DNA of 64,000 nucleotides from contig OZ249438.1 in assembly GCA_965235115.1 (NCBI GenBank), forward strand, positions 43,524,001 through 43,588,000, in the 5' to 3' direction. This stretch comes from Laetmonice hystrix. Taxonomy: Eukaryota. The translations under genes and the position numbers were made by a program. Positions 3,346-22,550 of the stretch are shown here, piece after piece; within the stretch, counting starts at the first letter, position 1; each line of letters opens with the position of its first letter. The notes below the pieces were generated by a model. It did not search any database, was not told where the DNA came from, and was given only the letters and a program-made list of their open reading frames with translations.

Positions 3346-4959
3346 TTTCACATTTGCACATTATATTCGGTTGTTATAATCCACCAGTATCGTTGCATTA
3401 GTAAAATATGTGTCGTAACTGACTGTTTGGATTGCCAAACTCCCGGAATTGATAAGCATGGCGGTACAAAGCTTTATTATCAGTTATATTATGCAAACTG
3501 TTGGAAATGCCGCGACACGGTGAGACCAACGAGTGAGACGGGCTTTCGACGCCGGCGGACCCACCCAGACATTGCTTGGACACACACAAGAAGGTGGGTA
3601 ACATCTTGTAGAAAATAGAAGGACGTTGACGTATTTATTATGTACATATCTTTATTGTAACATTTATTATTTATTCACCACTAATATTGATGTGTAGAGT
3701 TCCCAGACGCCGGGTGTAGGCTACTTCTTGCCAGGCTTAAGTCTGAGTTTCACGTTTCACTCAAATCTACTCAACTCAGGAATAGCGCCAGATTGGAATG
3801 AAGTGGAGGATTCACAATGGCTAAAAATGCTCTTTGGAACGCCTCTCTAAAAACTTAAGTTTTCTCAAACTTAAGACTACTTAAGTCTGTTCGAGAAACC
3901 CGCCCATGATCTCTGGAGAGGCGGTGTGGCAGATAACGCCAATTAAATTCTAAAACCGCCATCTGGAGAAGGGAGGAGCTGGCTGCCTTCGGGTCGACCA
4001 CTATACTTTATTATACTGTAAAATAAACGCTATAGCAGGCAGATCATAGCCACCTGCCGAACAAGCAGGATCTCACTCTGTTTTCTGGCTGTCGAAAGCC
4101 GCGCATTCAACGCTCCGAATGCACGGTTTTCTTCAATCTGTTAAGTGTATGCCGCTTTTGAATTCGGCCTATAGTAGGCATACTGTATACTGGACGTTTG
4201 AATTTGTGCTAGGCTTCTGTAGCCGCATCCATAATAGGCCTATAGCAGTGGGGGGGGGGGGGGGGTCCATGATTTTGATAAAGCAGGGGGAGGGGGCCAC
4301 CTAAACAACCTCGCTACGTTTGGCATAAGTTGAGTGTCACTGTATTACACACACAATACATGTGTTGTTGATTTATTTAGGCAGATATTTTTTAAAGGGA
4401 AGGCCATGTTAATGAAAGAATACTTATTCCTAGAAGTCATACTTTTAATTTTGTATTCTAGAGGATGGCTAGCCGGTATCCAGATAAGTCGAGACACGGG
4501 AGGAACAGGTATGCCGAAAACTGCTTTCTTACAAATCCAGAACACATTCAATTCTAAAGTCAGGATCTGTGTTTCTAAATAATACTGGGAAAATAATTTG
4601 GTGGTCTTATAGCAGAATGCTACTATCAAATCTGAAATGTAGAAACTAAAATTTAAAAGTGAAAATACATGTAGTTCTAACAGTGACCACTAGGTAACTC
4701 AATTCAACGTGCCACCCTGGCACTTCCACGTGTTATGACAGGAAACGTCGACAGAAATATAATGTATTTGCATGAAACCAATTTCAACTTTTATTTCATA
4801 ATTAAAAACCATTAACAAATTATCAACAGTGACATGAAATGAAGACAATTTAAAAGGCAATAGCAAGAAAGCAACAGAAACTGTAAATATTGACTGTCCC
4901 TCACAGGCTCGTGTCCGGGGGGGGGGAGGTCTGGACCCCCTGCTTCCCCAGAGTATAGT

Positions 4960-5185
4960 TTTCCCGTTACATTTAACAGATTTTACTGTAGTTTGCCATT
5001 CCAGAACGGTTTAATTACCCTTGGTAACACATTTCCCCCTAAAATCTTTTTCTGAATTGGCCCAGATGATGAAACCCTTTAGCAAAATTCCCTCAGTCAC
5101 AGCAGAGGCATTTTTTTCCTGACCATGACACCATATCCCCCTTGTAGCTTTCTTTCTTTTGCGACTATCACTCCTCGATTTCCAG
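4960..5185 (-). mobile_element. Possible decayed CR1-type LINE 3' fragment
   Basis: Minus strand reads E-R-K-L-Q-G, then after a 1-nt slip D-M-V (cf. CR1 EERRLRGDMI), with a later TGGAAT (WN) motif; heavily degenerate. Confidence 0.3.
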
Positions 5186-5242
5186 CACCAGCATGTATCT
5201 GTCATATTTCATAAAAAGTAAAATTTATCTATTACTTCATAG

Positions 5243-8200
5243 GGGGAGACAGTACTCACCAGGCAGAGCTAACAGAGGACAAATGGCAGAAAACCCACGC
5301 CTTGGATATCAACAACTCCAGGGACTGAAAGAGAAAGAGCCTTCGAATATTGCATTTACTCTGGCTAATAGCCGTAATGGTGTCAATGATCATTTCAACA
5401 ATCCTAGGCTGAGTTACGATTTGGTGGACACACTTGTCATTCTTCTTGCAAAAGCACTTCCATGCAAATCAATGCCAGACATACAAATACAACTAATCAA
5501 CACAGTGCGAATATCAGAGTTTGTCAAATTCAGATTACCTCAACGTCTGAGTGATCTAGCGATTCGTTGTGAGAGTGACACCAAGGTTCAGCAAATACTA
5601 AAGGGAACGATTCAGATAATAAAAAACATCCTTGAAATAATGCCGCATGCACTGCAGAATGTACAGCATTGTCTTCAAGTGCTGAACAGACCACGCTTCA
5701 GGATGTGCCCAAGCTCTCAGGATCTGGATCATTTACTTTACCAAGTAAATCATATCATCCATTCTGGAGAGCATAAAGCACGTCAGGATATTCCCACTAA
5801 TTTTCGTGACATGGACATTTTCCCAACCATGCATGATTTGGAGTTCGATGAGAGGCCCTTCCTTAGGGTTAACAAGACAAAGGGTAGGTATGTAAACTTG
5901 GATCACTACCTAGACGTACAGTTTCGTCTGCTACGAGAAGACTTCGTGCGACCTCTTCGTGAAGGTATTAACTGGTACAAGAACAAAGAAGCTGACCGAG
6001 GTCAACAGCAGAACATCAGATTGTACAGAGATGTCGAGATCCTCTACCCATGTTGTACTCGGCACGGGATTGCGCACGTCATACGCTTCAACACTAAACA
6101 CTTCCGTCATGTTGCATGGGAAGCCTCTCAGCGTCTGATCTATGGCTCACTAGTTTGCCTCTCAGATGATGGTTTCCAAACCATGATTCTGGGAACTGTG
6201 GTCGACAGAGATTTGAAGTCCTTGAAAAAGGGAGAAATTCAGATCTGCTTTCAGAATTTAGCCTGGTTTCAAACTGGCCAAAGGTTTGTCATGATTGAGA
6301 CTGAAGCTTACTTCGAGTCCTACCGTCATGTACTGAAGGGTCTCCAGAACACTAAAGCAGAAAGATTTCCCTTCCAAAGATACATAATTGAGTGTAAAAG
6401 ACAAGTGATGCCTCCACGGTATATGAAAGGAAAGACAATTGATTTCTCATGCCTTATCGAGAAGAAAACGCCGTCCTCTGTAGACGTTAAAGTACTCGAC
6501 AAGAGCAAATGGCCAAGTGCCCAAACAATGAAGGTAGACGAGTCACAACATGCAGCTTTACAAGCTGCACTGACACAGGAGGTGTCAATCATTCAAGGCC
6601 CTCCAGGAACCGGGAAAACGTATATAGGTCTCAAGATTGTCAAGTTGCTCCTTGAGAACGAAGTGTGGGACCCCATACTTGTTGTGTGTTACACGAACCA
6701 TGCACTTGATCAGTTTTTGGAAGGTATACATGCCATTCTGCCAGAAGAACCTGTACGTGTTGGGGGCAGAAGCAAAAGACAACTTGTACGTGATGGCCAC
6801 AGAGGCCGAAAAAAACTTGTACGTGTTGGGGGTAGAAGCAAAAGTGACATCTTGAGCAGTTGCACCTTGAAAGCAATTAAAGAGGGAAAGCGTTCCTGTC
6901 CAGTTCAAATAGCCGTTGCCGTAGGTGAAATTGAAGAGTTAAAAAAAATTCTTGAAAAAGACATGGCTCATCTGGCAGTGACGGGAAAACACATATTGAA
7001 GGAATCACTCCTTTCTCCCTTTATGTCGCTGCACCAGCGGCAGAGCCTCCGTTCTTATGGGGACCTGTACACCTGGCTGATGGAAGGAGATGGCTTCGAA
7101 GGGGAAGAGGAGCAAGGAGAAATTGAAGAACCAGATTATAGCATGGATGAAGATGATAAACGCATTCTTGAAGACGAATTGGAAGACAAGGAACGGCAGC
7201 GGAAAGAATGGAGTAGCTATGTCAATAGCATTGCAGCGAATGATGTAGAATTGCGTCTGCAATCTTGCAACGTACCAGACAATGATGGCTTTCAGGAGCC
7301 AAGAAGTTCACGCAGAAGTGTGGAGAAACATATAGAACATTGCCTACACCATTCCAGTGTAATGGACCAAGAGGTGGCAGAAAGGATCAGGGATGTATGG
7401 GCGCTTCCTATGGATTCACGTTGGGAACTTTATCGTTGGTGGATCTCCAAATACAAGCAACATCTCCTTGACACAATGGATGAAAACATGAGAGTATACG
7501 ACCGAGCAGCAGAACGTCTCAAGGAGGCACGGGAGGCAGAAGACCTTCGAATTATGAAAACCGCAAGAGTGGTGGGCATGACCACAACTGGAGCTGCCCG
7601 CTACCAGAAAATCATTGAGAAACTAAGCCCACGTGTTGTCATCGTGGAGGAGGCGGCAGAAGTTCTTGAAGCCCATATCATCACAACCCTGCCATCAGAT
7701 TGTCAACATCTGATTCTGATTGGCGATCACAAGCAGTTGCGACCAAGTCCATGCGTGTATGAACTTGCAAAGAAGTACCATCTTGATTGTTCGCTGTTTG
7801 AGCGAATGGTAAACAATGATATGCCGTGTGTATGCCTTCAAAATCAGCATAGGATGCGACCAGAGATCTCCGTGCTGATGAGACCTATCTATCCAGAGCT
7901 TCGCGATGACGTGTCGGTCATGGATTATGAGAACATCAGAGGAGTTCAAAAGAATGTGTTTTTTGTGAATCATAAATTCCATGAAAAGAGCATAAAGGAA
8001 GCAAAAAGTAAGACAAATTATCATGAAGCAGAGTATATCACTGCATTGGCCAAGCATTTCCTTCTTCAAGGTTATGATACATCACAGATCACCATCCTTA
8101 CAACATACACTGGGCAATTTCAGGTGATACGGAAAATGATGAAGAAGTCACCAGTGAAGGTATGCACGGTAGACAGCTACCAGGGCGAGGAAAACGATAT

Positions 8201-10340
8201 AATACTCTTGTCACTTGTCAGGAGCAATGAGGATGGAAAGATAGGCTTCTTAAAAGTGGCCAACCGGGTTTGTGTTGCACTTTCAAGGGCAAAGAAAGGC
8301 TTCTTTGTCATTGGAAACATGACGTTCCTGTCAGCTCATTCTGATCTCTGGCGTCAAATGATGACAATTCTTGAGGCGCAAGATTCCACTGGGGAGAGTC
8401 TCCCGTTGATCTGTGAGAATCATCCCAAAAAGGAAGGCATTAGAGCAGCTACTGCGGCTGACTTTCAAAAGGCGCCTGAGGGAGGCTGTCTGGTGCCGTG
8501 TGAGGCAAAGCTAGACTGTGGGCATGTTTGTCAGCTTCTCTGCCATGGATATGATCGGCAACACAAGGAATACAAATGCCAAAAAACATGTGAAAGTGTA
8601 TGCGAACTGAAGCACACATACCGATGGAAATGCTACATGAAAAGTGGCAACTGCATGACTCCTGTTGATAAGGAAATACCATCCTGTCATCACAAGCAAA
8701 TGATTCCATGTTCTGTTGATCCTCAAGAATGGCCATGCACGGAAAACTGTGAGCGGCCTTTGGAATGTGGGCATCAATGTCCCAAATTGTGTGTTCATGA
8801 CCACAATAAATACAAATGCCAAAAACCATGTGACAGAACGGTATGCGAATGGAAGCACAGGTGTCCAAAGAAATGCTACATGGAATGTGGCAACTGTATG
8901 ACAGGTGTAGAGAAGGAAATACCATCCTGTAACCACAAGCAAATGATTCCATGTTCCGTTGATCCCCAAGAATGGTCCCGCCGCTGCACGGTACTTGTAG
9001 AAAAGAAGATGCCATCTTGTAATCACAAGCAGATGGTTCCATGTTCTCTTGATCCCCAAGAATGGTCATGCATGGCAAACTGTGAGAAGCTGTTTCAATG
9101 TGGACATCAGTGTCCAAAATTGTGTGGTCAGGACCACGAACGACAATGCTCAGTCTTTGTTGACAAGGCCTTGCCGTGTGGTCATAAATTCAAAGTCAAA
9201 TGCCACCTGTCACTTGGTATCTGTAGGAAGAAATGCAGGGCAACCTTACATTGCAGTCACGAATGCCCAGGAAAATGTGGACTCTGCAGAGGAGGGCGTG
9301 TGCATGTGGCATGTAAACAACATTGTGGACGGTTTCTCGTTTGTGGCCACAAGTGTAGGGAACGCTGCTCAGATGTCTGCCCACCATGCCAGCACCCATG
9401 TGAGAATCGCTGCATCCACAGTAAGTGCAGGAAGACTTGTGGAGAACCCTGTGACCCCTGTAGAGAACCTTGCACGTGGTCGTGTCCACATTTTAAGTGC
9501 ACAAATATGTGCTTTCAACCGTGCAATAGACCCCCATGTTCAAAGCCATGCAAGAAAACGCTGGAAAAATGTGGCCATCCTTGTATTGGGCTCTGTGGGG
9601 AGCCCTGCCCAACTCTCTGCCGTCAATGTGATGAGGATAAAGTGACTGAGATTTTCTATGACAAAGCAGACGAACCAACCACAAGGTTTGTTCAGTTAGA
9701 GGACTGCAAACATGTGATCGAATCCAAAGCAATGGATAGATACATGGGCATGGTAGATGGAAAGCAACATCAGGACAATAGTATTCAGTTAAAAAAGTGT
9801 CCTAAGTGTAGCACGCCTATTCGTCGGAGCCAAAGGTACAGACAATCCGTCAACAACGCACTGCGGGACATTGAGGCAGTCAAGCGAAAAACAACTGTCA
9901 ATGTGCAAGAGCTGAAATCAAACACGAACAGTGAACTAAAAGAACTAGAGAAAGTTGATGCAGCTACTGCCCTTACCTTGAAAAGGAGTCTCCGTCAATA
10001 TCGGACCAGTAAGGAACTGGAAAACATCCGTTTCCTGTTAGGTTGTGCAAAGGCAATTGCAAACGTCCAGAAAGCAGGGAGAGTAAAAGAAGGGTCGTTA
10101 AAGAAATCTGAAACGGATCTGATGCATCGCCAACTTGAAACACTTGACGACCTGAAGTCTTGGATACTCCAGCAGAGTAGATTTTCTGAGCAACAGTCAA
10201 ATGAATGTGTTCAGGAAATATCCAGGATCCGTCTGATTGTTCAACTGCTCACCATGGTAGCCAAGATGAATGAAGCTCCAAATGATGTGAACTGTGTAAA
10301 ATATTTGTTATTGGCAAATGTTGTCCTCTTTCAAAATTAA
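5243..10340 (+). CDS. ZNFX1: ZNFX1-like NFX1-type zinc finger RNA helicase, main coding exon
   Basis: Open 1715-codon frame. Acceptor ttcatag at 5241-5242, first internal ATG 5283 (MAENPRLGYQQL). Motifs: YLDVQFRLLREDFVRPLREGI, RLIYGSLVCLS, Walker A QGPPGTGKT, Ia VCYTNHALDQF, Walker B VEEAAEV, III LIGDHKQLRP, IV QHRMRPEI, V TVDSYQGEEND, VI NRVCVALSRAK, then CGH-C NF-X1 repeats and DCKH...CPKC. The real 3' donor is uncertain (phase-0 GT at 10257, 10287 or 10296); the last ~13 codons and the TAA lie in an inverted-repeat element. Confidence 0.95.
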
Positions 10341-10402
10341 GCAAAAAAATGATACCTCACCGGGTTACTTCTTTTGTTAAGATGTTACTAATTACTGTTT
10401 AG

Positions 10403-10436
<34 letters not shown>

Positions 10437-10639
10437 ATTTCTATTTGTCATAACGGTCTCCAAGTTATAGAAGTGGTAAACAACAACAACAACAACAAAA
10501 GTTTGATTTTGAACATTTTCACTTTTTGCTCATTTACGCCAGTGAAAATGTTCAAAGTCAAAAATTTTTTTTTTCTCTTTTTATTATTTTTTTTTTATTT
10601 AACCACTTCTATTTGTCATAACACCGTTCTGACAAAAAA

Positions 10640-10671
<32 letters not shown>

Positions 10672-10784
10672 TTGCAAACTCTATTCATTAACATGAAGAA
10701 AATACCAACTTCAAACGCTCCTAACAAAAAAACTAAGCCGGTGAGGTATCATTTTTTTTGCTGAATTTTGAAAGAGGACAACAT
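10318..10784. mobile_element. Non-autonomous inverted-repeat element (MITE-like) at the 3' end of the ZNFX1 main exon
   Basis: atgttgtcctctttcaaaattaagcaaaaaaatgatacctcaccgg (10318-10363) is the near-perfect reverse complement of 10738-10784; interior has poly-T/poly-A and a duplicated accayttctatttgtcataac motif. True termini and TSD not resolved. Confidence 0.7.
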
Positions 10785-11047
10785 ACTCTGTTTATCTGCA
10801 AATTTTAAAAAAAAATCTGTCTCAAACAAATTTTTGGCCTCACACTAGCACTTGTCCTTAATAAGATAGGACATACGGTCTTCTTATTTTTGGTAGTGTG
10901 TTAATGTTGTTGGAATGGACCAAGTTATCTTCTTCAGCAAAAGTGAACTTGGATTATAATGAAAGAAGAAATATAGACTTAATGCCATTCCTAAGTGGAA
11001 ATATGGAGTAAAGATTTAAGTATTGTAAGGATCTTTTTCTTTAACAG

Positions 11048-11150
11048 ATCAAGGAACTCCTTCCAAGTCTAGAATCTACTGAACTAGAGCACCAAACGAT
11101 TGTTCCAGCCATGGGCATGAGAAAGGGAGCCTGGTACAAATGTCCAAAAG
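11048..11150 (+). CDS. ZNFX1: ZNFX1-like exon, first half of the RZ finger
   Basis: Strong acceptor tctttttctttaacag|, donor AAG|gtgagt; phase 0 to 1; IKELLPSLESTELEHQTIVPAMGMRKGAWYKCPK(G) matches the ZNFX1 tail pattern ...IVxAMGxxxGxWYKCPxG. Confidence 0.85.
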
Positions 11151-11434
11151 GTGAGTGAAGTGTGTGGGAGTGGCTCGGTGGAGACCAACCGGTTTGGGAT
11201 TGGTGTGTTACATCGCACTAACTTCTCAGTTGGCTCATATTGTTGATGCAGCCAGTGGCTTTGCAAAATCTAATAAAATATATCGACCTGTTGTTGTTTA
11301 CATCTATCATCTTGGACTTAAAATCTCGATACCTAACACTTACGCGGTTCAAATATACATGTATAGTCGAAGGAAGAAGTTTAGTTTTGCTAACAATGAA
11401 ATATGTCTAAACGATAATTTGAACAACGTTCTAG

Positions 11435-11930
11435 GGCATATCTACTGCATCGGCGAGTGTTGGGGAACAGTGGTGAAGTGCCCAGAGTGTTGCGGAGCAG
11501 AGATGTAGAATCGAAGTGCCCAGTGTGTTGTGGAGCAGAGATGTAGAATCGAAGTGCCCAGTGTGTTGCAGAGCAGAGATGTAGAATCGAAATGCCCAGT
11601 GTTGCGGAGCAGAGATGTAGAATCGAAGTGCCCAAAGTGTTGCGGAGCAGAGATGTAGAATCGAAGTGCCCAGAGTGTTGTGGAGCAGAGATGTAGAATC
11701 GAAGTGGCCAGAGTGTTGCGGAGCAGAGATGTAGAATCGAAGTGCCCAGTGTTGCGGAGCAGAGATGGAGAATCGAAGTGCCCAGAGTGTTGCGGAGCAG
11801 AGATGTAGAATCGAAGTGCCCAGTGTTGCGGAGCTGCGCGGGACAATGCTGTATCGTCCCAGAAATGGACGATTTGTCGCCTGGTTGAAGCAAGCAGGCA
11901 TGGAGATATGCAAACCGACCAACCAGAAAA
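11435..11930 (+). pseudogene. ZNFX1: Disrupted terminal ZNFX1 exon (second half of RZ finger and tail)
   Basis: ctag|gg cat atc tac tgc atc ggc gag tgt = (G)HIYCIGEC, in phase with the previous exon; reads WGTVVKCPECCGAEM then TAG (11506-11508). After the intervening array, remnants PEMD and (shifted frame) FVAWLKQAGME match the ZNFX1 tail PEMDGAxxAAWSxxA. Confidence 0.8.
11476..11833. repeat. 36-38-bp minisatellite derived from RZ-finger coding sequence, ~9.5 copies
   Basis: Unit aagtgcccagagtgttgcggagcagagatgtagaatcg. Confidence 0.92.
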
Positions 11931-11937
11931 CTTTTCA

Positions 11938-12500
11938 AGATGCATTCTTTACTGAATGCTGTACCGAGAACAGTAACATGTACAGTAAAATGCATTCTTT
12001 ACTGAATGCTGTACCGAGAACAGTAACACGTAGAGTAAGATGTACCGAGAACAGTAACACGTACAGTAAGATGCATTCATTACTGAATGCTGTACCGATA
12101 ACAGTAACATGTACAGTAAGATGCATTCATTACTGAATGCTGTACCGAGAACAGTAGCACGTACAGTAAGATGCATTCATTACTGAATGCTGTACCGAGA
12201 ACAGTAACACGTACAGTAAGATGTACCGAGAACAGTAACATGTACAGTAAAATGCATTCTGAATGCTGTGCTGAGAACAGTAACACTAGAGTAAGATGTA
12301 CCGAGAACAGTAACATGTACAGTAAGATGCATTCATTACTGAATGCTGTACCGAGAACAGTAACACGTACAGTAAGATGCATTCATTACTGAATGCTGTA
12401 CCGAGAACAGTAACATGTACAGTAAGATGCATTCATTACTGAATGCTGTACCGAGAACAGTAACATGTAAAGTAAGATGCATTCATTACTGAATGCTGTG
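11938..12500. repeat. ~50-bp minisatellite with internal-deletion variants
   Basis: Unit gatgcattcattactgaatgctgtaccgagaacagtaacatgtacagtaa. Confidence 0.9.
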
Positions 12501-20589: not shown

Positions 20590-22372
20590 ACGAACAAACA
20601 CAATGGTGAGTAACGAACAACCACAATGGTGAGTGGAAGGGTACTAACGAACAAACACAATGGTGAGTGGAAGGGTACTAACGAACAACCACAATGGTGA
20701 GTGGAAGGGTACTAACGAACAAACACAATGGTGAGTGGAAGGGTACTAACGAACAACCACAATGGTGAGTGGAAGGGTACTAACGAACAAACACAATGGT
20801 GAGTAACGAACAACCACAATGGTGAGTGGAAGGGTACTAACGAACAAACACAATGGTGAGTGGAAGGGTACTAACGAACAACCACAATGGTGAGTGGAAG
20901 GGTACTAACGAACAACCACAATGGTGAGGGGAAGGGTACTAACGAACAAACACAATGGTGAGTGGAAGGGTACTAACGAACAACCACAATGGTGAGTAAC
21001 GAACAACCACAATGGTGAGTGGAAGGGTACTAACGAACAACCACAATAGTGAGTGGAAGGGTACTAACGAACAACCACAATGGTGAGTGGAAGGGTACTA
21101 ACGAACAACCACAATGGTGAGTGGAAGGGTACTAACGAACAACCACAATGGTGAGTGGAAGGGTACTAACGAACAACCGCAATGGTGAGTGGAAGGGTAC
21201 TAACGAACAACCACAATGGTGAGTGGAAGGGTACTAACGAACAACCGCAATGGTGAGTAAAAGGGTACTAACGAACAACCACAATGGTGAGTGGAAGGGT
21301 ACTAACGAACGAACACAATGGTGAGTGGAAGGGTACTAACGAACAACCACAATGGTGAGTGGAAGGGTACTAACGAACAACCACAATGGTGAGTGGAAGG
21401 GTACTAACGAACAACCACAATGGTGAGTGGAAGGGTACTAACGAACAACCACAATGGTGGGTGGAAGGGTACTAACGAACAACCACAATGGTGAGTGGAA
21501 GGGTACTAACGAACAACCACAATGGTGAGTGGAAGGGTACTAACGAACAACCACAATGGTGAGTGGAAGGGTACTAACGAACAACCACAATGGTGAGTGG
21601 AAGGGTACTAACGAACAACCGCAATGGTGAGTAAAAGGGTACTAACGAACAACCACAATGGTGAGTGGAAGGGTACTAACGAACGAACACAATGGTGAGT
21701 GGAAGGGTACTAACGAACAACCACAATGGTGAGTGGAAGGGTACTAACGAACAACCACAATGGTGGGTGGAAGGGTACTAACGAACAACCACAATGGTGA
21801 GTGGAAGGGTACTAACGAACAACCACAATGGTGAGTGGAAGGGTACTAACGAACAACCACAATGGTGAGTGGAAGGGTACTAACGAACAACCACAATGGT
21901 GAGTGGAAGGGTACTAACGAACAACCACAATGGTGAGTGGAAGGGTACTAACGAACAACCACAATGGTGAGTGGAAGGGTACTAACGAACGAACACAATG
22001 GTGAGTGGAGGGGTACTAACGAACAACCACATTGGTGAGTGGAAGGGTATTAACGAACAAACACAATGGTGAGTAACGAACAACCACAATGGTGAGTGGA
22101 AGGGTACTAACGAACAACCACAATGGTGAGTGGAAGGGTACTAACGAACGACCACAATGGTGAGTGGAAGGGTACTAACGAACAAACACAATGGTGAGTA
22201 ACGAACAACCACAATGGTGAGTGGAAGGGTACTAACGAACAACCACAATGGTGAGTGGAAGGGTACTAACGAACAAACACAATGGTGAGTGGAAGGGTAC
22301 TAACGAACAACCACAATAGTGAGTGGAAGGGTACTAACGAACAAACACAATGGTGAGTAACGAACAACCACA
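20590..22372. repeat. 34-bp minisatellite (~50 copies, with 23-bp deletion variants)
   Basis: Unit aacgaacaaccacaatggtgagtggaagggtact. Confidence 0.95.
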
Positions 22373-22550
22373 ATGGCCGTGCCCCATGGATTACTAACGG
22401 GCTGCCCTGTAGATTCCGTCCTGACAGTCCTAGTGTCCACGGGAATTCGAAATAATAAAGATATCTTTAAAATTGTCTCTAGCATTTCAACGGAAATCGA
22501 AAATAAAGAAGCCAGGACAGTATTCTTACTATTGTTTTCTGTATTTATAG

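What the first reader, a model, noticed from the sequence alone, without database searches (positions are those of the whole stretch)
11435..11930. A minisatellite made from the ZNFX1 RZ-finger codons has broken the finger it came from
Seen: the last exon begins in phase as (G)HIYCIGEC and enters a 36-38 bp array whose unit, rotated, reads gta gaa tcg aag tgc cca gag tgt tgc gga gca gag at = V-E-S-K-C-P-E-C-C-G-A-E. This is the xxxCPxCGxx half of the RZ finger, repeated ~9.5 times. The 38-nt junction creates ATG TAG, stopping the protein at 11508. The old tail (PEMD, FVAWLKQAGME) survives past the array, frameshifted. Known: the RZ (RNF213/ZNFX1) finger continues IGGxxH...EMDG and is an E3 ubiquitin-ligase module. 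Inference: a de novo minisatellite was seeded in coding DNA and removed the distal RZ residues, giving an unusually traceable birth of a minisatellite.
Basis: partly seen in the sequence, partly recalled or inferred. Interest (0 to 1): 0.78.

Follow-up and report, generated by a model that had tools for sequence, protein, structure and literature searches.

The report
Minisatellite born inside ZNFX1 RZ finger
A 38-base stretch of the codons for a zinc-finger ubiquitin-ligase module at the end of an invertebrate ZNFX1 immune-helicase gene has been copied about ten times in place, so the expressed message now stops inside the finger; it is a clear example of a repeat born from coding DNA, but an ordinary event for this repeat-riddled genome.

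Summary
A 38-bp x 9.6 tandem array lies at 11475-11834, inside the last exon of a ZNFX1-like gene, and the reading frame stops at TAG 11506-11508.

- **Origin of the unit.** In the nearest intact relative I could fetch (L001), the unit's best match over 15 kb is the VESKCPEC codons of that gene's RZ exon. Both flanks of the array continue the RZ coding sequence.
- **Decayed tail.** The old tail survives in three frames. It has a +2 shift, a 7-nt loss, and the IGGxxH codons are gone altogether.
- **Expression.** A spliced contig from a probable RNA run joins 11150 to 11435 and runs through the stop.
- **What the protein keeps.** It retains all four zinc ligands and the nucleophile cysteine of the RZ finger. 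It lacks the general-base histidine.
- **Gene body.** The 1,701-codon body stays open and keeps about 91% of family-conserved residues.
- **Genome context.** 35 minisatellites cover 38% of this window. Earlier notes of this scan list other exon-derived arrays in the same genome (SKOR, PTK7, TSG101).

This is therefore a tidy instance of a common local process, not a singular event. Three things remain unverified: the copy number, the order of the lesions, and the exon 1/2 junction.

The parts
5193..10295 (+). Large exon of a ZNFX1-like gene (helicase core, NFX1-type zinc fingers, Miz-like domain). The true start may be the Met at 5283. The 3' donor at 10295|10296 (TGT|GTAAAA) is inferred, not verified.
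   Evidence: The ORF is 5193-10340. Pfam hits: ZNFX1 4.7e-33, AAA_12 6.6e-41, AAA_11 1.1e-24. It keeps 393 of 433 family-conserved columns. The Miz-like region aligns well.
10296..11047 (+). Presumed intron 1. It holds a high-copy MITE (about 10318-10786) plus an adjacent repeat reaching about 10861. The other haplotype lacks 10319-10856.
   Evidence: Terminal inverted repeats at 10318-10349/10753-10784 (97%) and 10343-10382/10719-10758. K-mer depth is 10^4-10^5, and a joint 10318->10857 appears in three DNA runs. The acceptor tttaacag|at is shared with L001.
11048..11150 (+). Exon 2. It encodes the N-terminal helix of the RZ domain and the first zinc ligand (Cys codon 11141-11143), and ends in phase 1 after CPK-G.
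   Evidence: Translation IKELLPS...GAWYKCPK(G). L001 and the gene models P0055 and P0101 have an intron at the same position. Two haplotypes differ here at 4 exonic sites, 3 of them non-synonymous.
11151..11434 (+). Intron 2 (GT..AG), removed in the transcript.
   Evidence: A 178-nt contig of run X4 joins 11148/11150 to 11433/11435 with no mismatches. X4 has no depth over 11204-11320.
11435..11508 (+). Translated part of the last exon. It carries His ligand 11437-11439, nucleophile Cys 11458-11460, Cys ligands 11479-11481 and 11488-11490, and the stop TAG at 11506-11508.
   Evidence: Residue roles are mapped from human ZNFX1 C1849/H1853/C1860/C1869/C1872/H1881.
11455..11484 (+). 'Unit 0': a 30-nt diverged copy of the unit (E-C-W-G-T-V-V-K-C-P). 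Its first 16 nt match the rotated unit at 14 of 16 positions. It keeps the ACA GTG (Thr-Val) seen in L001 and lacks the +2 change and the TAG.
   Evidence: Sequence; comparison with L001.
11475..11834 (+). Minisatellite of 38-nt units (two are 36-nt variants), 9.6 copies, with a 150-nt higher-order period. Every full unit carries the TAG, or GAG in one unit, in the same place.
   Evidence: Best match in L001 is the VESKCPEC codons.
11835..11908 (+). Relic of the distal RZ coding sequence in three frames (RDNAVS / PEMDD / RFVAWLKQAGMEI). It lacks about 27-30 nt for xIGGxxHxL, carries +2 nt before PEMD, and has lost 7 nt after EMD.
   Evidence: Alignment to the intact L001 exon, protein comparison, and an X3 contig at 11805-11966 identical to the window.
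11937..12499 (+). Second, unrelated minisatellite (50/31-nt units). It starts where the ancestral 3' UTR would begin and is shorter by 274 nt in the other haplotype.
   Evidence: joint 12248->12523 in three DNA runs.

Best explanation
This is a ZNFX1-family gene whose C-terminal RZ finger, a zinc-stabilised E3 ubiquitin-ligase module, was disrupted by a tandem duplication of its own codons.

**Likely origin (inferred).** The RZ finger carries a built-in direct repeat: Glu/Asp-Cys-Gly codons (GAGTGTG-like) 36 nt apart, once before and once after the stretch GGAxVESKCP. I think slippage or unequal exchange between these two repeats duplicated that 36-nt segment. One copy then acquired a +2 change (ACA to GAGAT) that put TAG in frame. 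That 38-nt version was amplified, partly as a 150-nt four-unit block, to about ten copies.

**The boundary copy (unit 0).** It escaped homogenisation and stays in frame, so translation ends in the next unit at 11506-11508.

**Resulting protein (mapping shown, function inferred).** It keeps the four zinc ligands and the nucleophile Cys. It lacks the general-base His and everything after it.

**Downstream DNA (shown).** Now untranslated, it lost the IGGxxH codons and picked up two frameshifts.

**Gene body (shown).** The helicase, the zinc-finger stalk and the Miz-type E3 domain remain open and conserved, and the message is spliced and present in a probable RNA run.

**Probable function (inferred).** The gene most likely works as an RZ-dead ZNFX1 paralog, comparable to C. 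elegans ZNFX-1.
For: - **Array and stop.**
- **Origin of the unit.** Its best match in the whole 15.3-kb L001 locus, on either strand, is the orthologous VESKCPEC codons: 20/24, score 28, against a shuffle maximum of 26.
- **Flanks.** Both flanks are colinear with the intact L001 RZ exon.
- **Built-in repeat.** GA(T/G)TGTG occurs 36 nt apart in L001 as well.
- **Unit 0.** It keeps Thr-Val as in L001 and lacks the +2 change.
- **Pfam.** The RZ hit covers only profile positions 5-37 of 54, at 35.9 bits. An intact relative scores 82.6 bits over positions 8-53.
- **Residue roles.**, mapped.
- **Spliced contig through the stop, and contigs over both array edges.**
- **Conservation.** The body keeps 393/433 conserved columns; the translated RZ part keeps about 19/26.
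- **Array-free body.** No tandem array lies in 3348-11474, while 35 arrays cover 37.6% of the window.
- **Not a dispersed satellite.** K-mer depth over the array is only about 2-3x that of the unique flanks.
- **Published model.** Slippage between short direct repeats is an established model for minisatellite origin.
Against: - No paralog or ortholog closer than about 45% identity was available. The ancestral sequence, and so the choice between the two unit rotations, is inferred.
- The copy number rests on the assembly alone.
- All four runs come from one sample, which is probably the assembled one.
- Run X4 is not recorded as RNA. That it is RNA is inferred from the intron-skipping contig and from the empty intron.
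- The exon 1/exon 2 junction has no read support. About 32 codons that relatives carry before the RZ helix have no counterpart here. If no in-frame splice exists, the protein ends near 10338 and the RZ remnant is untranslated.
- The retained RZ part carries changes at conserved sites (GHW to GAW, CGG to CWG, K to P in the helix, a loop shorter by 2). RZ function may therefore have been lost before the array arose.
Confidence: 0.72

Rival explanations
1. Order reversed: the RZ finger was already dead, through the IGGxxH deletion, a frameshift or loss of selection. The array then expanded in sequence that had already become 3' UTR, so the minisatellite marks the wreck and did not cause it.
For: All nine full units share the +2 change and the TAG position, so most of the growth happened after a stop existed. 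The retained RZ part is less conserved than the body. The tail carries three further lesions. Minisatellites are everywhere in non-coding DNA here.
Against: Unit 0 lacks the +2 change and the TAG, so a duplication preceded that stop. No older stop lies upstream of the array in the terminal exon. The unit boundaries coincide with the finger's internal direct repeat.
Confidence: 0.25
2. The whole gene is a recently dead pseudogene, and the array is just one of its lesions.
For: Three of four allelic differences in exon 2 are non-synonymous. The linker before the RZ helix is missing, and the ORF closes at a transposon insertion.
Against: A 1,701-codon frame stays open, with 91% of family-conserved columns kept. 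5 of 8 variants in 9800-10296 are synonymous and the other 3 are conservative. The gene is spliced and seen in a probable RNA run. Its body is the longest array-free stretch of the window.
Confidence: 0.15
3. The RZ remnant is not translated at all. Translation ends at the end of exon 1, around 10338 in the transposon-bearing haplotype, and exons 2-3 are 3' UTR.
For: Homology to L001 exon 1 runs past the presumed donor to about 10318. The donor TGT|GTAAAA is weak and has no read support. Run X4 has no depth over 10034-10267.
Against: A phase-0 donor at 10296 pairs with the conserved phase-0 acceptor at 11047. Exons 2-3 are still spliced precisely. A stop that far upstream of two introns would normally trigger nonsense-mediated decay.
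Confidence: 0.2
4. Assembly artefact: the array or its length was created by mis-assembly.
For: Copy number could not be checked. A 12-13-nt indel at 11256 separates the window from all read contigs.
Against: Independent short-read contigs enter the array from the left in three runs, and one leaves it on the right. A spliced contig contains the first 41 nt of the array, including the stop.
Confidence: 0.05
5. A foreign, transposon-borne satellite inserted here and resembles RZ codons only by chance.
For: The genome is rich in repeats, and a MITE sits 700 nt upstream.
Against: The unit matches the orthologous codons of L001 best. The zinc ligands expected at that point of the finger are supplied by the first unit. 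Both flanks are contiguous RZ sequence. K-mer depth is low. The unit has no other copy in the window or in the metagenome collection.
Confidence: 0.03

Closest known systems
'Mirage' minisatellites of amphioxus (Adh3 and globin genes; PMC3087553)
   Same: The tandem arrays have units copied in place from a gene's own exon sequence, in an invertebrate genome full of minisatellites. The boundary copies escape homogenisation, and haplotypes differ in length.
   Different: Mirages span an exon-intron boundary and reportedly leave the mRNA unaffected. Here the unit is wholly inside the last coding exon (it starts 20-40 nt after the acceptor), is transcribed, and ends the reading frame.
C. elegans ZNFX-1, a natural ZNFX1 without an RZ domain (bioRxiv 10.1101/2025.10.14.682297)
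   Same: A family member that keeps the helicase, the zinc-finger stalk and the Miz-type E3 domain but has no working RZ finger.
   Different: Here the loss is caught in progress. Two thirds of the finger is still encoded and its remains are still readable in the DNA.
Human ZNFX1 / RNF213 RZ finger
   Same: The same motif order: C-x3-H, nucleophile Cys, C-x2-C. There is a Pfam PF20173 hit above threshold, and the phase-1 intron after CPxG is as in relatives.
   Different: The general-base His and the distal third are missing. The loop between the nucleophile Cys and the third ligand has 6 residues instead of 8, and several invariant residues are changed.
Internal tandem duplications and coding VNTRs (for example FLT3-ITD, MUC1 VNTR frameshifts; from general knowledge, not tested here)
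   Same: Head-to-tail duplication of exon sequence that alters or truncates the product.
   Different: Those are somatic or disease alleles, or long-standing in-frame repeat domains. This is a germline, out-of-frame array fixed at least in the assembled haplotype.

Membership tests
ZNFX1 (NFX1-type zinc finger-containing protein 1) | SF1 (Upf1-like) helicase core | tested here: met
   AAA_11 1.1e-24 and AAA_12 6.6e-41; a GPPGTGKT Walker A is present.
ZNFX1 (NFX1-type zinc finger-containing protein 1) | ZNFX1 domain (PF25396) and a Cys-rich NFX1-type finger stalk | tested here: met
   PF25396 4.7e-33. 95 of 99 conserved columns are kept in residues 1061-1440.
ZNFX1 (NFX1-type zinc finger-containing protein 1) | Miz/U-box-like E3 domain upstream of the RZ finger | tested here: inconclusive
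   The region aligns well with relatives and keeps LEDC.H, CP.C and RY, but IFFG is changed to IFYD. There is no profile or structural test, and the E2-binding Phe was not mapped with certainty.
RZ finger (PF20173) | Profile match above the curated cut-off | tested here: met
   35.9 bits against a cut-off of 27, but only profile positions 5-37 of 54.
RZ finger (PF20173) | Four zinc ligands, Cys-His-Cys-Cys (human C1849, H1853, C1869, C1872) | tested here: met
   All four align. The spacing from the nucleophile Cys to the third ligand is 6 residues instead of 8.
RZ finger (PF20173) | Nucleophile Cys (human C1860) | tested here: met
   The Cys of GEC at 11458-11460 aligns.
RZ finger (PF20173) | General-base His in IGGxxH (human H1881) | tested here: not met
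   The protein stops 5 residues after the fourth ligand. The IGGxxH codons are also absent from the relic DNA.
RZ finger (PF20173) | E3 ligase activity | not testable with these tools
   This needs an in vitro ubiquitylation assay.
Minisatellite | Head-to-tail array of 10-100-bp units | tested here: met
   38 bp x 9.6 copies, 92% matches.
Minisatellite | Length polymorphism between alleles | not testable with these tools
   K-mer contigs cannot cross the array. The neighbouring array does differ between haplotypes.
'Mirage' minisatellite | The unit spans an exon-intron boundary, splice site included | tested here: not met
   The unit lies wholly within the exon, and the acceptor at 11433-11434 is not part of it.

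The most novel reading that the evidence does not exclude
In this lineage a genome-wide, mirage-like process that turns exon fragments into minisatellites acts as a regular source of domain loss. Here it has produced an expressed, selectively maintained ZNFX1 paralog without RZ catalysis. Such a paralog would act either as a one-step Miz-type ligase or as a regulatory, dominant-negative subunit in ZNFX1 polymers. On this reading, minisatellite birth is a mechanism of functional diversification of immune paralogs rather than simple decay.
Probability: 0.15. Interest if true: 0.6.

Novelty: new member of a known kind. Interest (0 to 1): 0.4.

Why it matters
Four things are readable at once: the seed, the diverged boundary copy, the amplified units and the decayed downstream remainder. 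An intact relative is available for comparison. The locus therefore documents how a minisatellite can start from a short direct repeat that a protein motif imposes on its own codons, here the two Glu-Cys-Gly stretches of the RZ finger.

It also gives a natural separation-of-function allele of ZNFX1. The helicase, the stalk and the Miz domain are kept, the zinc site and the nucleophile of the RZ finger are kept, and the general base is lost. This could inform work on the two-step E3 mechanism.

Taken alone it is one more exon-derived array in a genome that makes many. The genome-wide pattern is the more interesting subject.

Tried and rejected
1. **Another RZ exon that could serve as an intact terminal exon.** I searched all 64 kb with a motif scan and with tblastn using 34 RZ domains. 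Nothing turned up beyond this locus.
2. **Paralogs in the window.** tblastn with the 1,715-aa product of the large ORF found none.
3. **Close relatives in the protein collection.** The best are about 45% identical, so no same-species paralog was available. DNA for the best hit, P0004, could not be fetched.
4. **A small coding exon at 10931-11008 to explain the roughly 32 missing codons.** Its phases do not fit exon 2, so I rejected it.
5. **10857-11047 as a relic of the 3' end of exon 1.** A tblastn extension suggested this, but DNA alignment to L001 scores at or below the shuffle level. The acceptor is also shared with L001, so I rejected it.
6. **Exact-match scan of the metagenome collection with 29 nt of the unit.** No hit. 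This says little.
7. **Earlier notes of the scan.** They hold no other ZNFX1 locus of this genome.
8. **Allelic variants as a test of selection.** There are too few sites to be significant.
9. **Literature search for ZNFX1 family expansions in invertebrates.** Nothing usable.

Full report
**What is there.** The window holds one ZNFX1-like gene on the + strand.
- A single large open frame (5193-10340) carries the Pfam ZNFX1 domain and the SF1 helicase halves AAA_11 and AAA_12.
- Downstream lie a 103-nt exon (11048-11150: IKELLPS...GAWYKCPK, ending in phase 1) and a last exon that begins at 11435.
- The spliced tail reads ...WYKCPKGHIYCIGECWGTVVKCPECCGAEM and stops at TAG 11506-11508.
- It matches the Pfam RZ-type finger at 35.9 bits (cut-off 27), but only over profile positions 5-37 of 54. 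An intact relative gives 82.6 bits over positions 8-53.

**The array.**
- Tandem Repeats Finder reports 11475-11834, period 38, 9.6 copies, 92% matches. It also reports a 150-nt period with 94% matches and no indels.
- The units measure 38,38,38,36,38,38,38,36,38 and then a 22-nt partial unit. This is a four-unit block repeated about 2.4 times.
- Units differ at 0-4 positions, and the first and ninth are identical.
- The unit has no other copy in the window. An exact scan of the metagenome collection found nothing.

**Read support.** Only four runs hold this stretch. All come from one sample, probably the assembled one, and all are kept as k-mer contigs.
- In three DNA runs a contig runs from intron 2 into the first unit, ending at 11492, 11503 or 11504. 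That is where unique k-mers end.
- One contig covers 11805-11966 without a difference, bridging the last unit, the relic tail and the start of the next array.
- Depth over the array is about 2-3 times that of the unique flanks, whereas the transposon in intron 1 reaches 10^4-10^5. The unit is therefore not a dispersed satellite.
- The number of copies cannot be checked this way.
- The fourth run (X4) has only a tenth of the contig volume and no depth over intron 2. It gives a 178-nt contig that joins 11148/11150 to 11433/11435 with no mismatch and continues to 11515, past the stop. I take X4 for RNA. This is an inference, because the record does not say so.

**Where the unit comes from.** The protein search found no relative closer than about 45% identity.
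- The locus of one of the two best hits, L001 from an ENA assembly, could be fetched.
- It has an intact RZ finger, split by a phase-1 intron at the same place (CPKG|H). Its terminal exon encodes GHYYCIGDCGGATVESKCPECDSRIGGGGHRLRADNSLAPEMDGARYAAWSERANMANYQI.
- Over all 15.3 kb of L001 and both strands, the best local match of the unit is the VESKCPEC codons of that exon. The match is 20 of 24, score 28, against a shuffle mean of 21 +/- 1.7 and a shuffle maximum of 26.
- The stretch before the array and the stretch after it align with the same exon on either side.
- The third and fourth zinc ligands, which the finger needs at that point, are supplied by the first unit.
- The array was therefore made in place from the finger's own codons.

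**The old tail.** Against L001, the sequence after the array has four features.
- It lacks some 27-30 nt, the codons for xIGGxxHxL.
- It has 2 extra nt before PEMD.
- It has lost 7 nt after EMD.
- As a result RDNAVS (11839-11856), PEMDD (11859-11873) and RFVAWLKQAGMEI (11870-11908) sit in three frames.

**What the truncation removes.**
- In human ZNFX1, C1849, H1853, C1869 and C1872 bind zinc, while C1860 and H1881 are the nucleophile and the general base (bioRxiv 10.1101/2025.10.14.682297). RNF213 has the equivalent residues (PMC11549300).
- In the alignment the window protein keeps all four ligands and the nucleophile Cys, and it lacks the general-base His.
- The part still translated is also altered. 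The invariant GHW reads GAW and CGG reads CWG. A Pro sits in the ubiquitin-binding helix, GLGIS reads SLEST, and the loop between the nucleophile and the third ligand has 6 residues instead of 8.
- At columns that are at least 90% conserved in 30 intact relatives, the body keeps 393 of 433. The translated RZ part keeps about 19 of 26.
- The Miz-like E3 region aligns well.
- The same preprint notes that C. elegans ZNFX-1 lacks the RZ domain altogether and probably relies on its Miz domain. A family member without a working RZ finger therefore has precedent.

**How the array probably began.** Two rotations of the unit fit the data.
This needs one extra codon after CPEC, which none of 34 relatives has.
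- *My preferred rotation.* The unit starts at GAGTGT (Glu-Cys). It reads E-C-C-G-A-E-(+2)-V-E-S-K-C-P and matches L001's D-C-G-G-A-T-V-E-S-K-C-P position for position, with 2 extra nt.
- *Support for my rotation.* The finger carries GA(T/G)TGTG twice, exactly 36 nt apart, in L001 as well. The 30 nt before the array (11455-11484) begin with 14 of 16 nt identical to the unit, including the unusual T after TGT. They keep ACA GTG (Thr-Val) as in L001, without the +2 change.
- *Sequence of events under my rotation.* A 36-nt in-frame duplication between short direct repeats came first, as in a published model of minisatellite origin (cited in PMC2820488). Then came the +2/TAG change in a downstream copy, and then amplification of that copy. 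The boundary copy was left out of homogenisation, as described for amphioxus arrays.
Only closer paralogs can settle it.

**Is the gene alive?** Points for:
- The frame is open over 1,701 codons.
- It keeps 91% of family-conserved columns.
- 5 of 8 variants in 9800-10296 are synonymous and the other 3 are conservative.
- A precisely spliced contig is present in the probable RNA run.
- 3348-11474 is free of tandem arrays, although 35 arrays cover 37.6% of the window.

Points against, or open:
- Three of four allelic differences in exon 2 change the residue.
- The exon 1/exon 2 junction is unverified.
- Homology to L001's exon 1 runs past the presumed donor (10295|10296) to about 10318. A heterozygous MITE is inserted there.
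- About 32 codons that L001 and other relatives have before the RZ helix have no counterpart.
- If no in-frame splice is used, the RZ stub is not translated at all.

**Context and verdict.** Earlier notes of this scan list other arrays in this genome made from exon ends and splice sites (SKOR, PTK7, TSG101 and others). Two follow-ups compare them with amphioxus 'mirages'. I did not check those loci. The array density in this window fits that picture.

The present case differs from a mirage in that the unit is entirely exonic and is read by the ribosome. It is a well-documented member of a known kind: a coding-sequence-derived minisatellite, giving an RZ-defective ZNFX1 paralog. The order of the lesions, the copy number and the upstream junction remain open.

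Noticed in passing
window 10318-10861: A MITE with roughly 65-nt terminal inverted repeats (10318-10382 / 10719-10784) plus an adjacent repeat. K-mer depth in the DNA runs is 10^4-10^5. The other haplotype lacks 10319-10856. The insertion sits where homology to the relative's exon 1 ends, and it supplies the stop at 10338.
   Followed up: partly
window 11937-12499: A second, unrelated minisatellite (50- and 31-nt units) begins where the ancestral 3' UTR would start. Contigs of three DNA runs show a form shorter by 274 nt with 23 other letters in between, so its length differs between haplotypes.
   Followed up: partly
window 20611-22376: A 34-nt unit repeated about 52 times contains AATG|GTGAGTGG, a good 5' splice-site motif. 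It may be a 'mirage'-type array made from an exon end and its donor.
   Followed up: no
window 1-64000: 35 separate minisatellite arrays (units 13-140 nt, TRF score 200 or more) cover 37.6% of the window. The longest array-free stretch (3348-11474) coincides with the ZNFX1 gene body.
   Followed up: partly
window 11256: The contigs of all three DNA runs carry a 12-13-nt insertion (TTAATACATAGA-like) in intron 2 that the window lacks. No contig without it was laid. The cause could be a haplotype difference or a small assembly error.
   Followed up: no
window 11041-11183: Two haplotypes are present at equal depth and differ at 5 sites: 11071 synonymous, 11092 His>Gln, 11117 Met>Val, 11147 Lys>Glu (in CPKG), and 11153 at intron position +3. 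The probable RNA contig carries the window's allele.
   Followed up: partly
L001 9817-9928 and 10526-10710: The closest available relative (ENA assembly ERZ26222911) has the same two-exon layout of the RZ domain, with an almost identical acceptor (tttaacag|at) before the helix exon. Its published gene call (P0006) stops in the intron and misses the RZ finger.
   Followed up: yes
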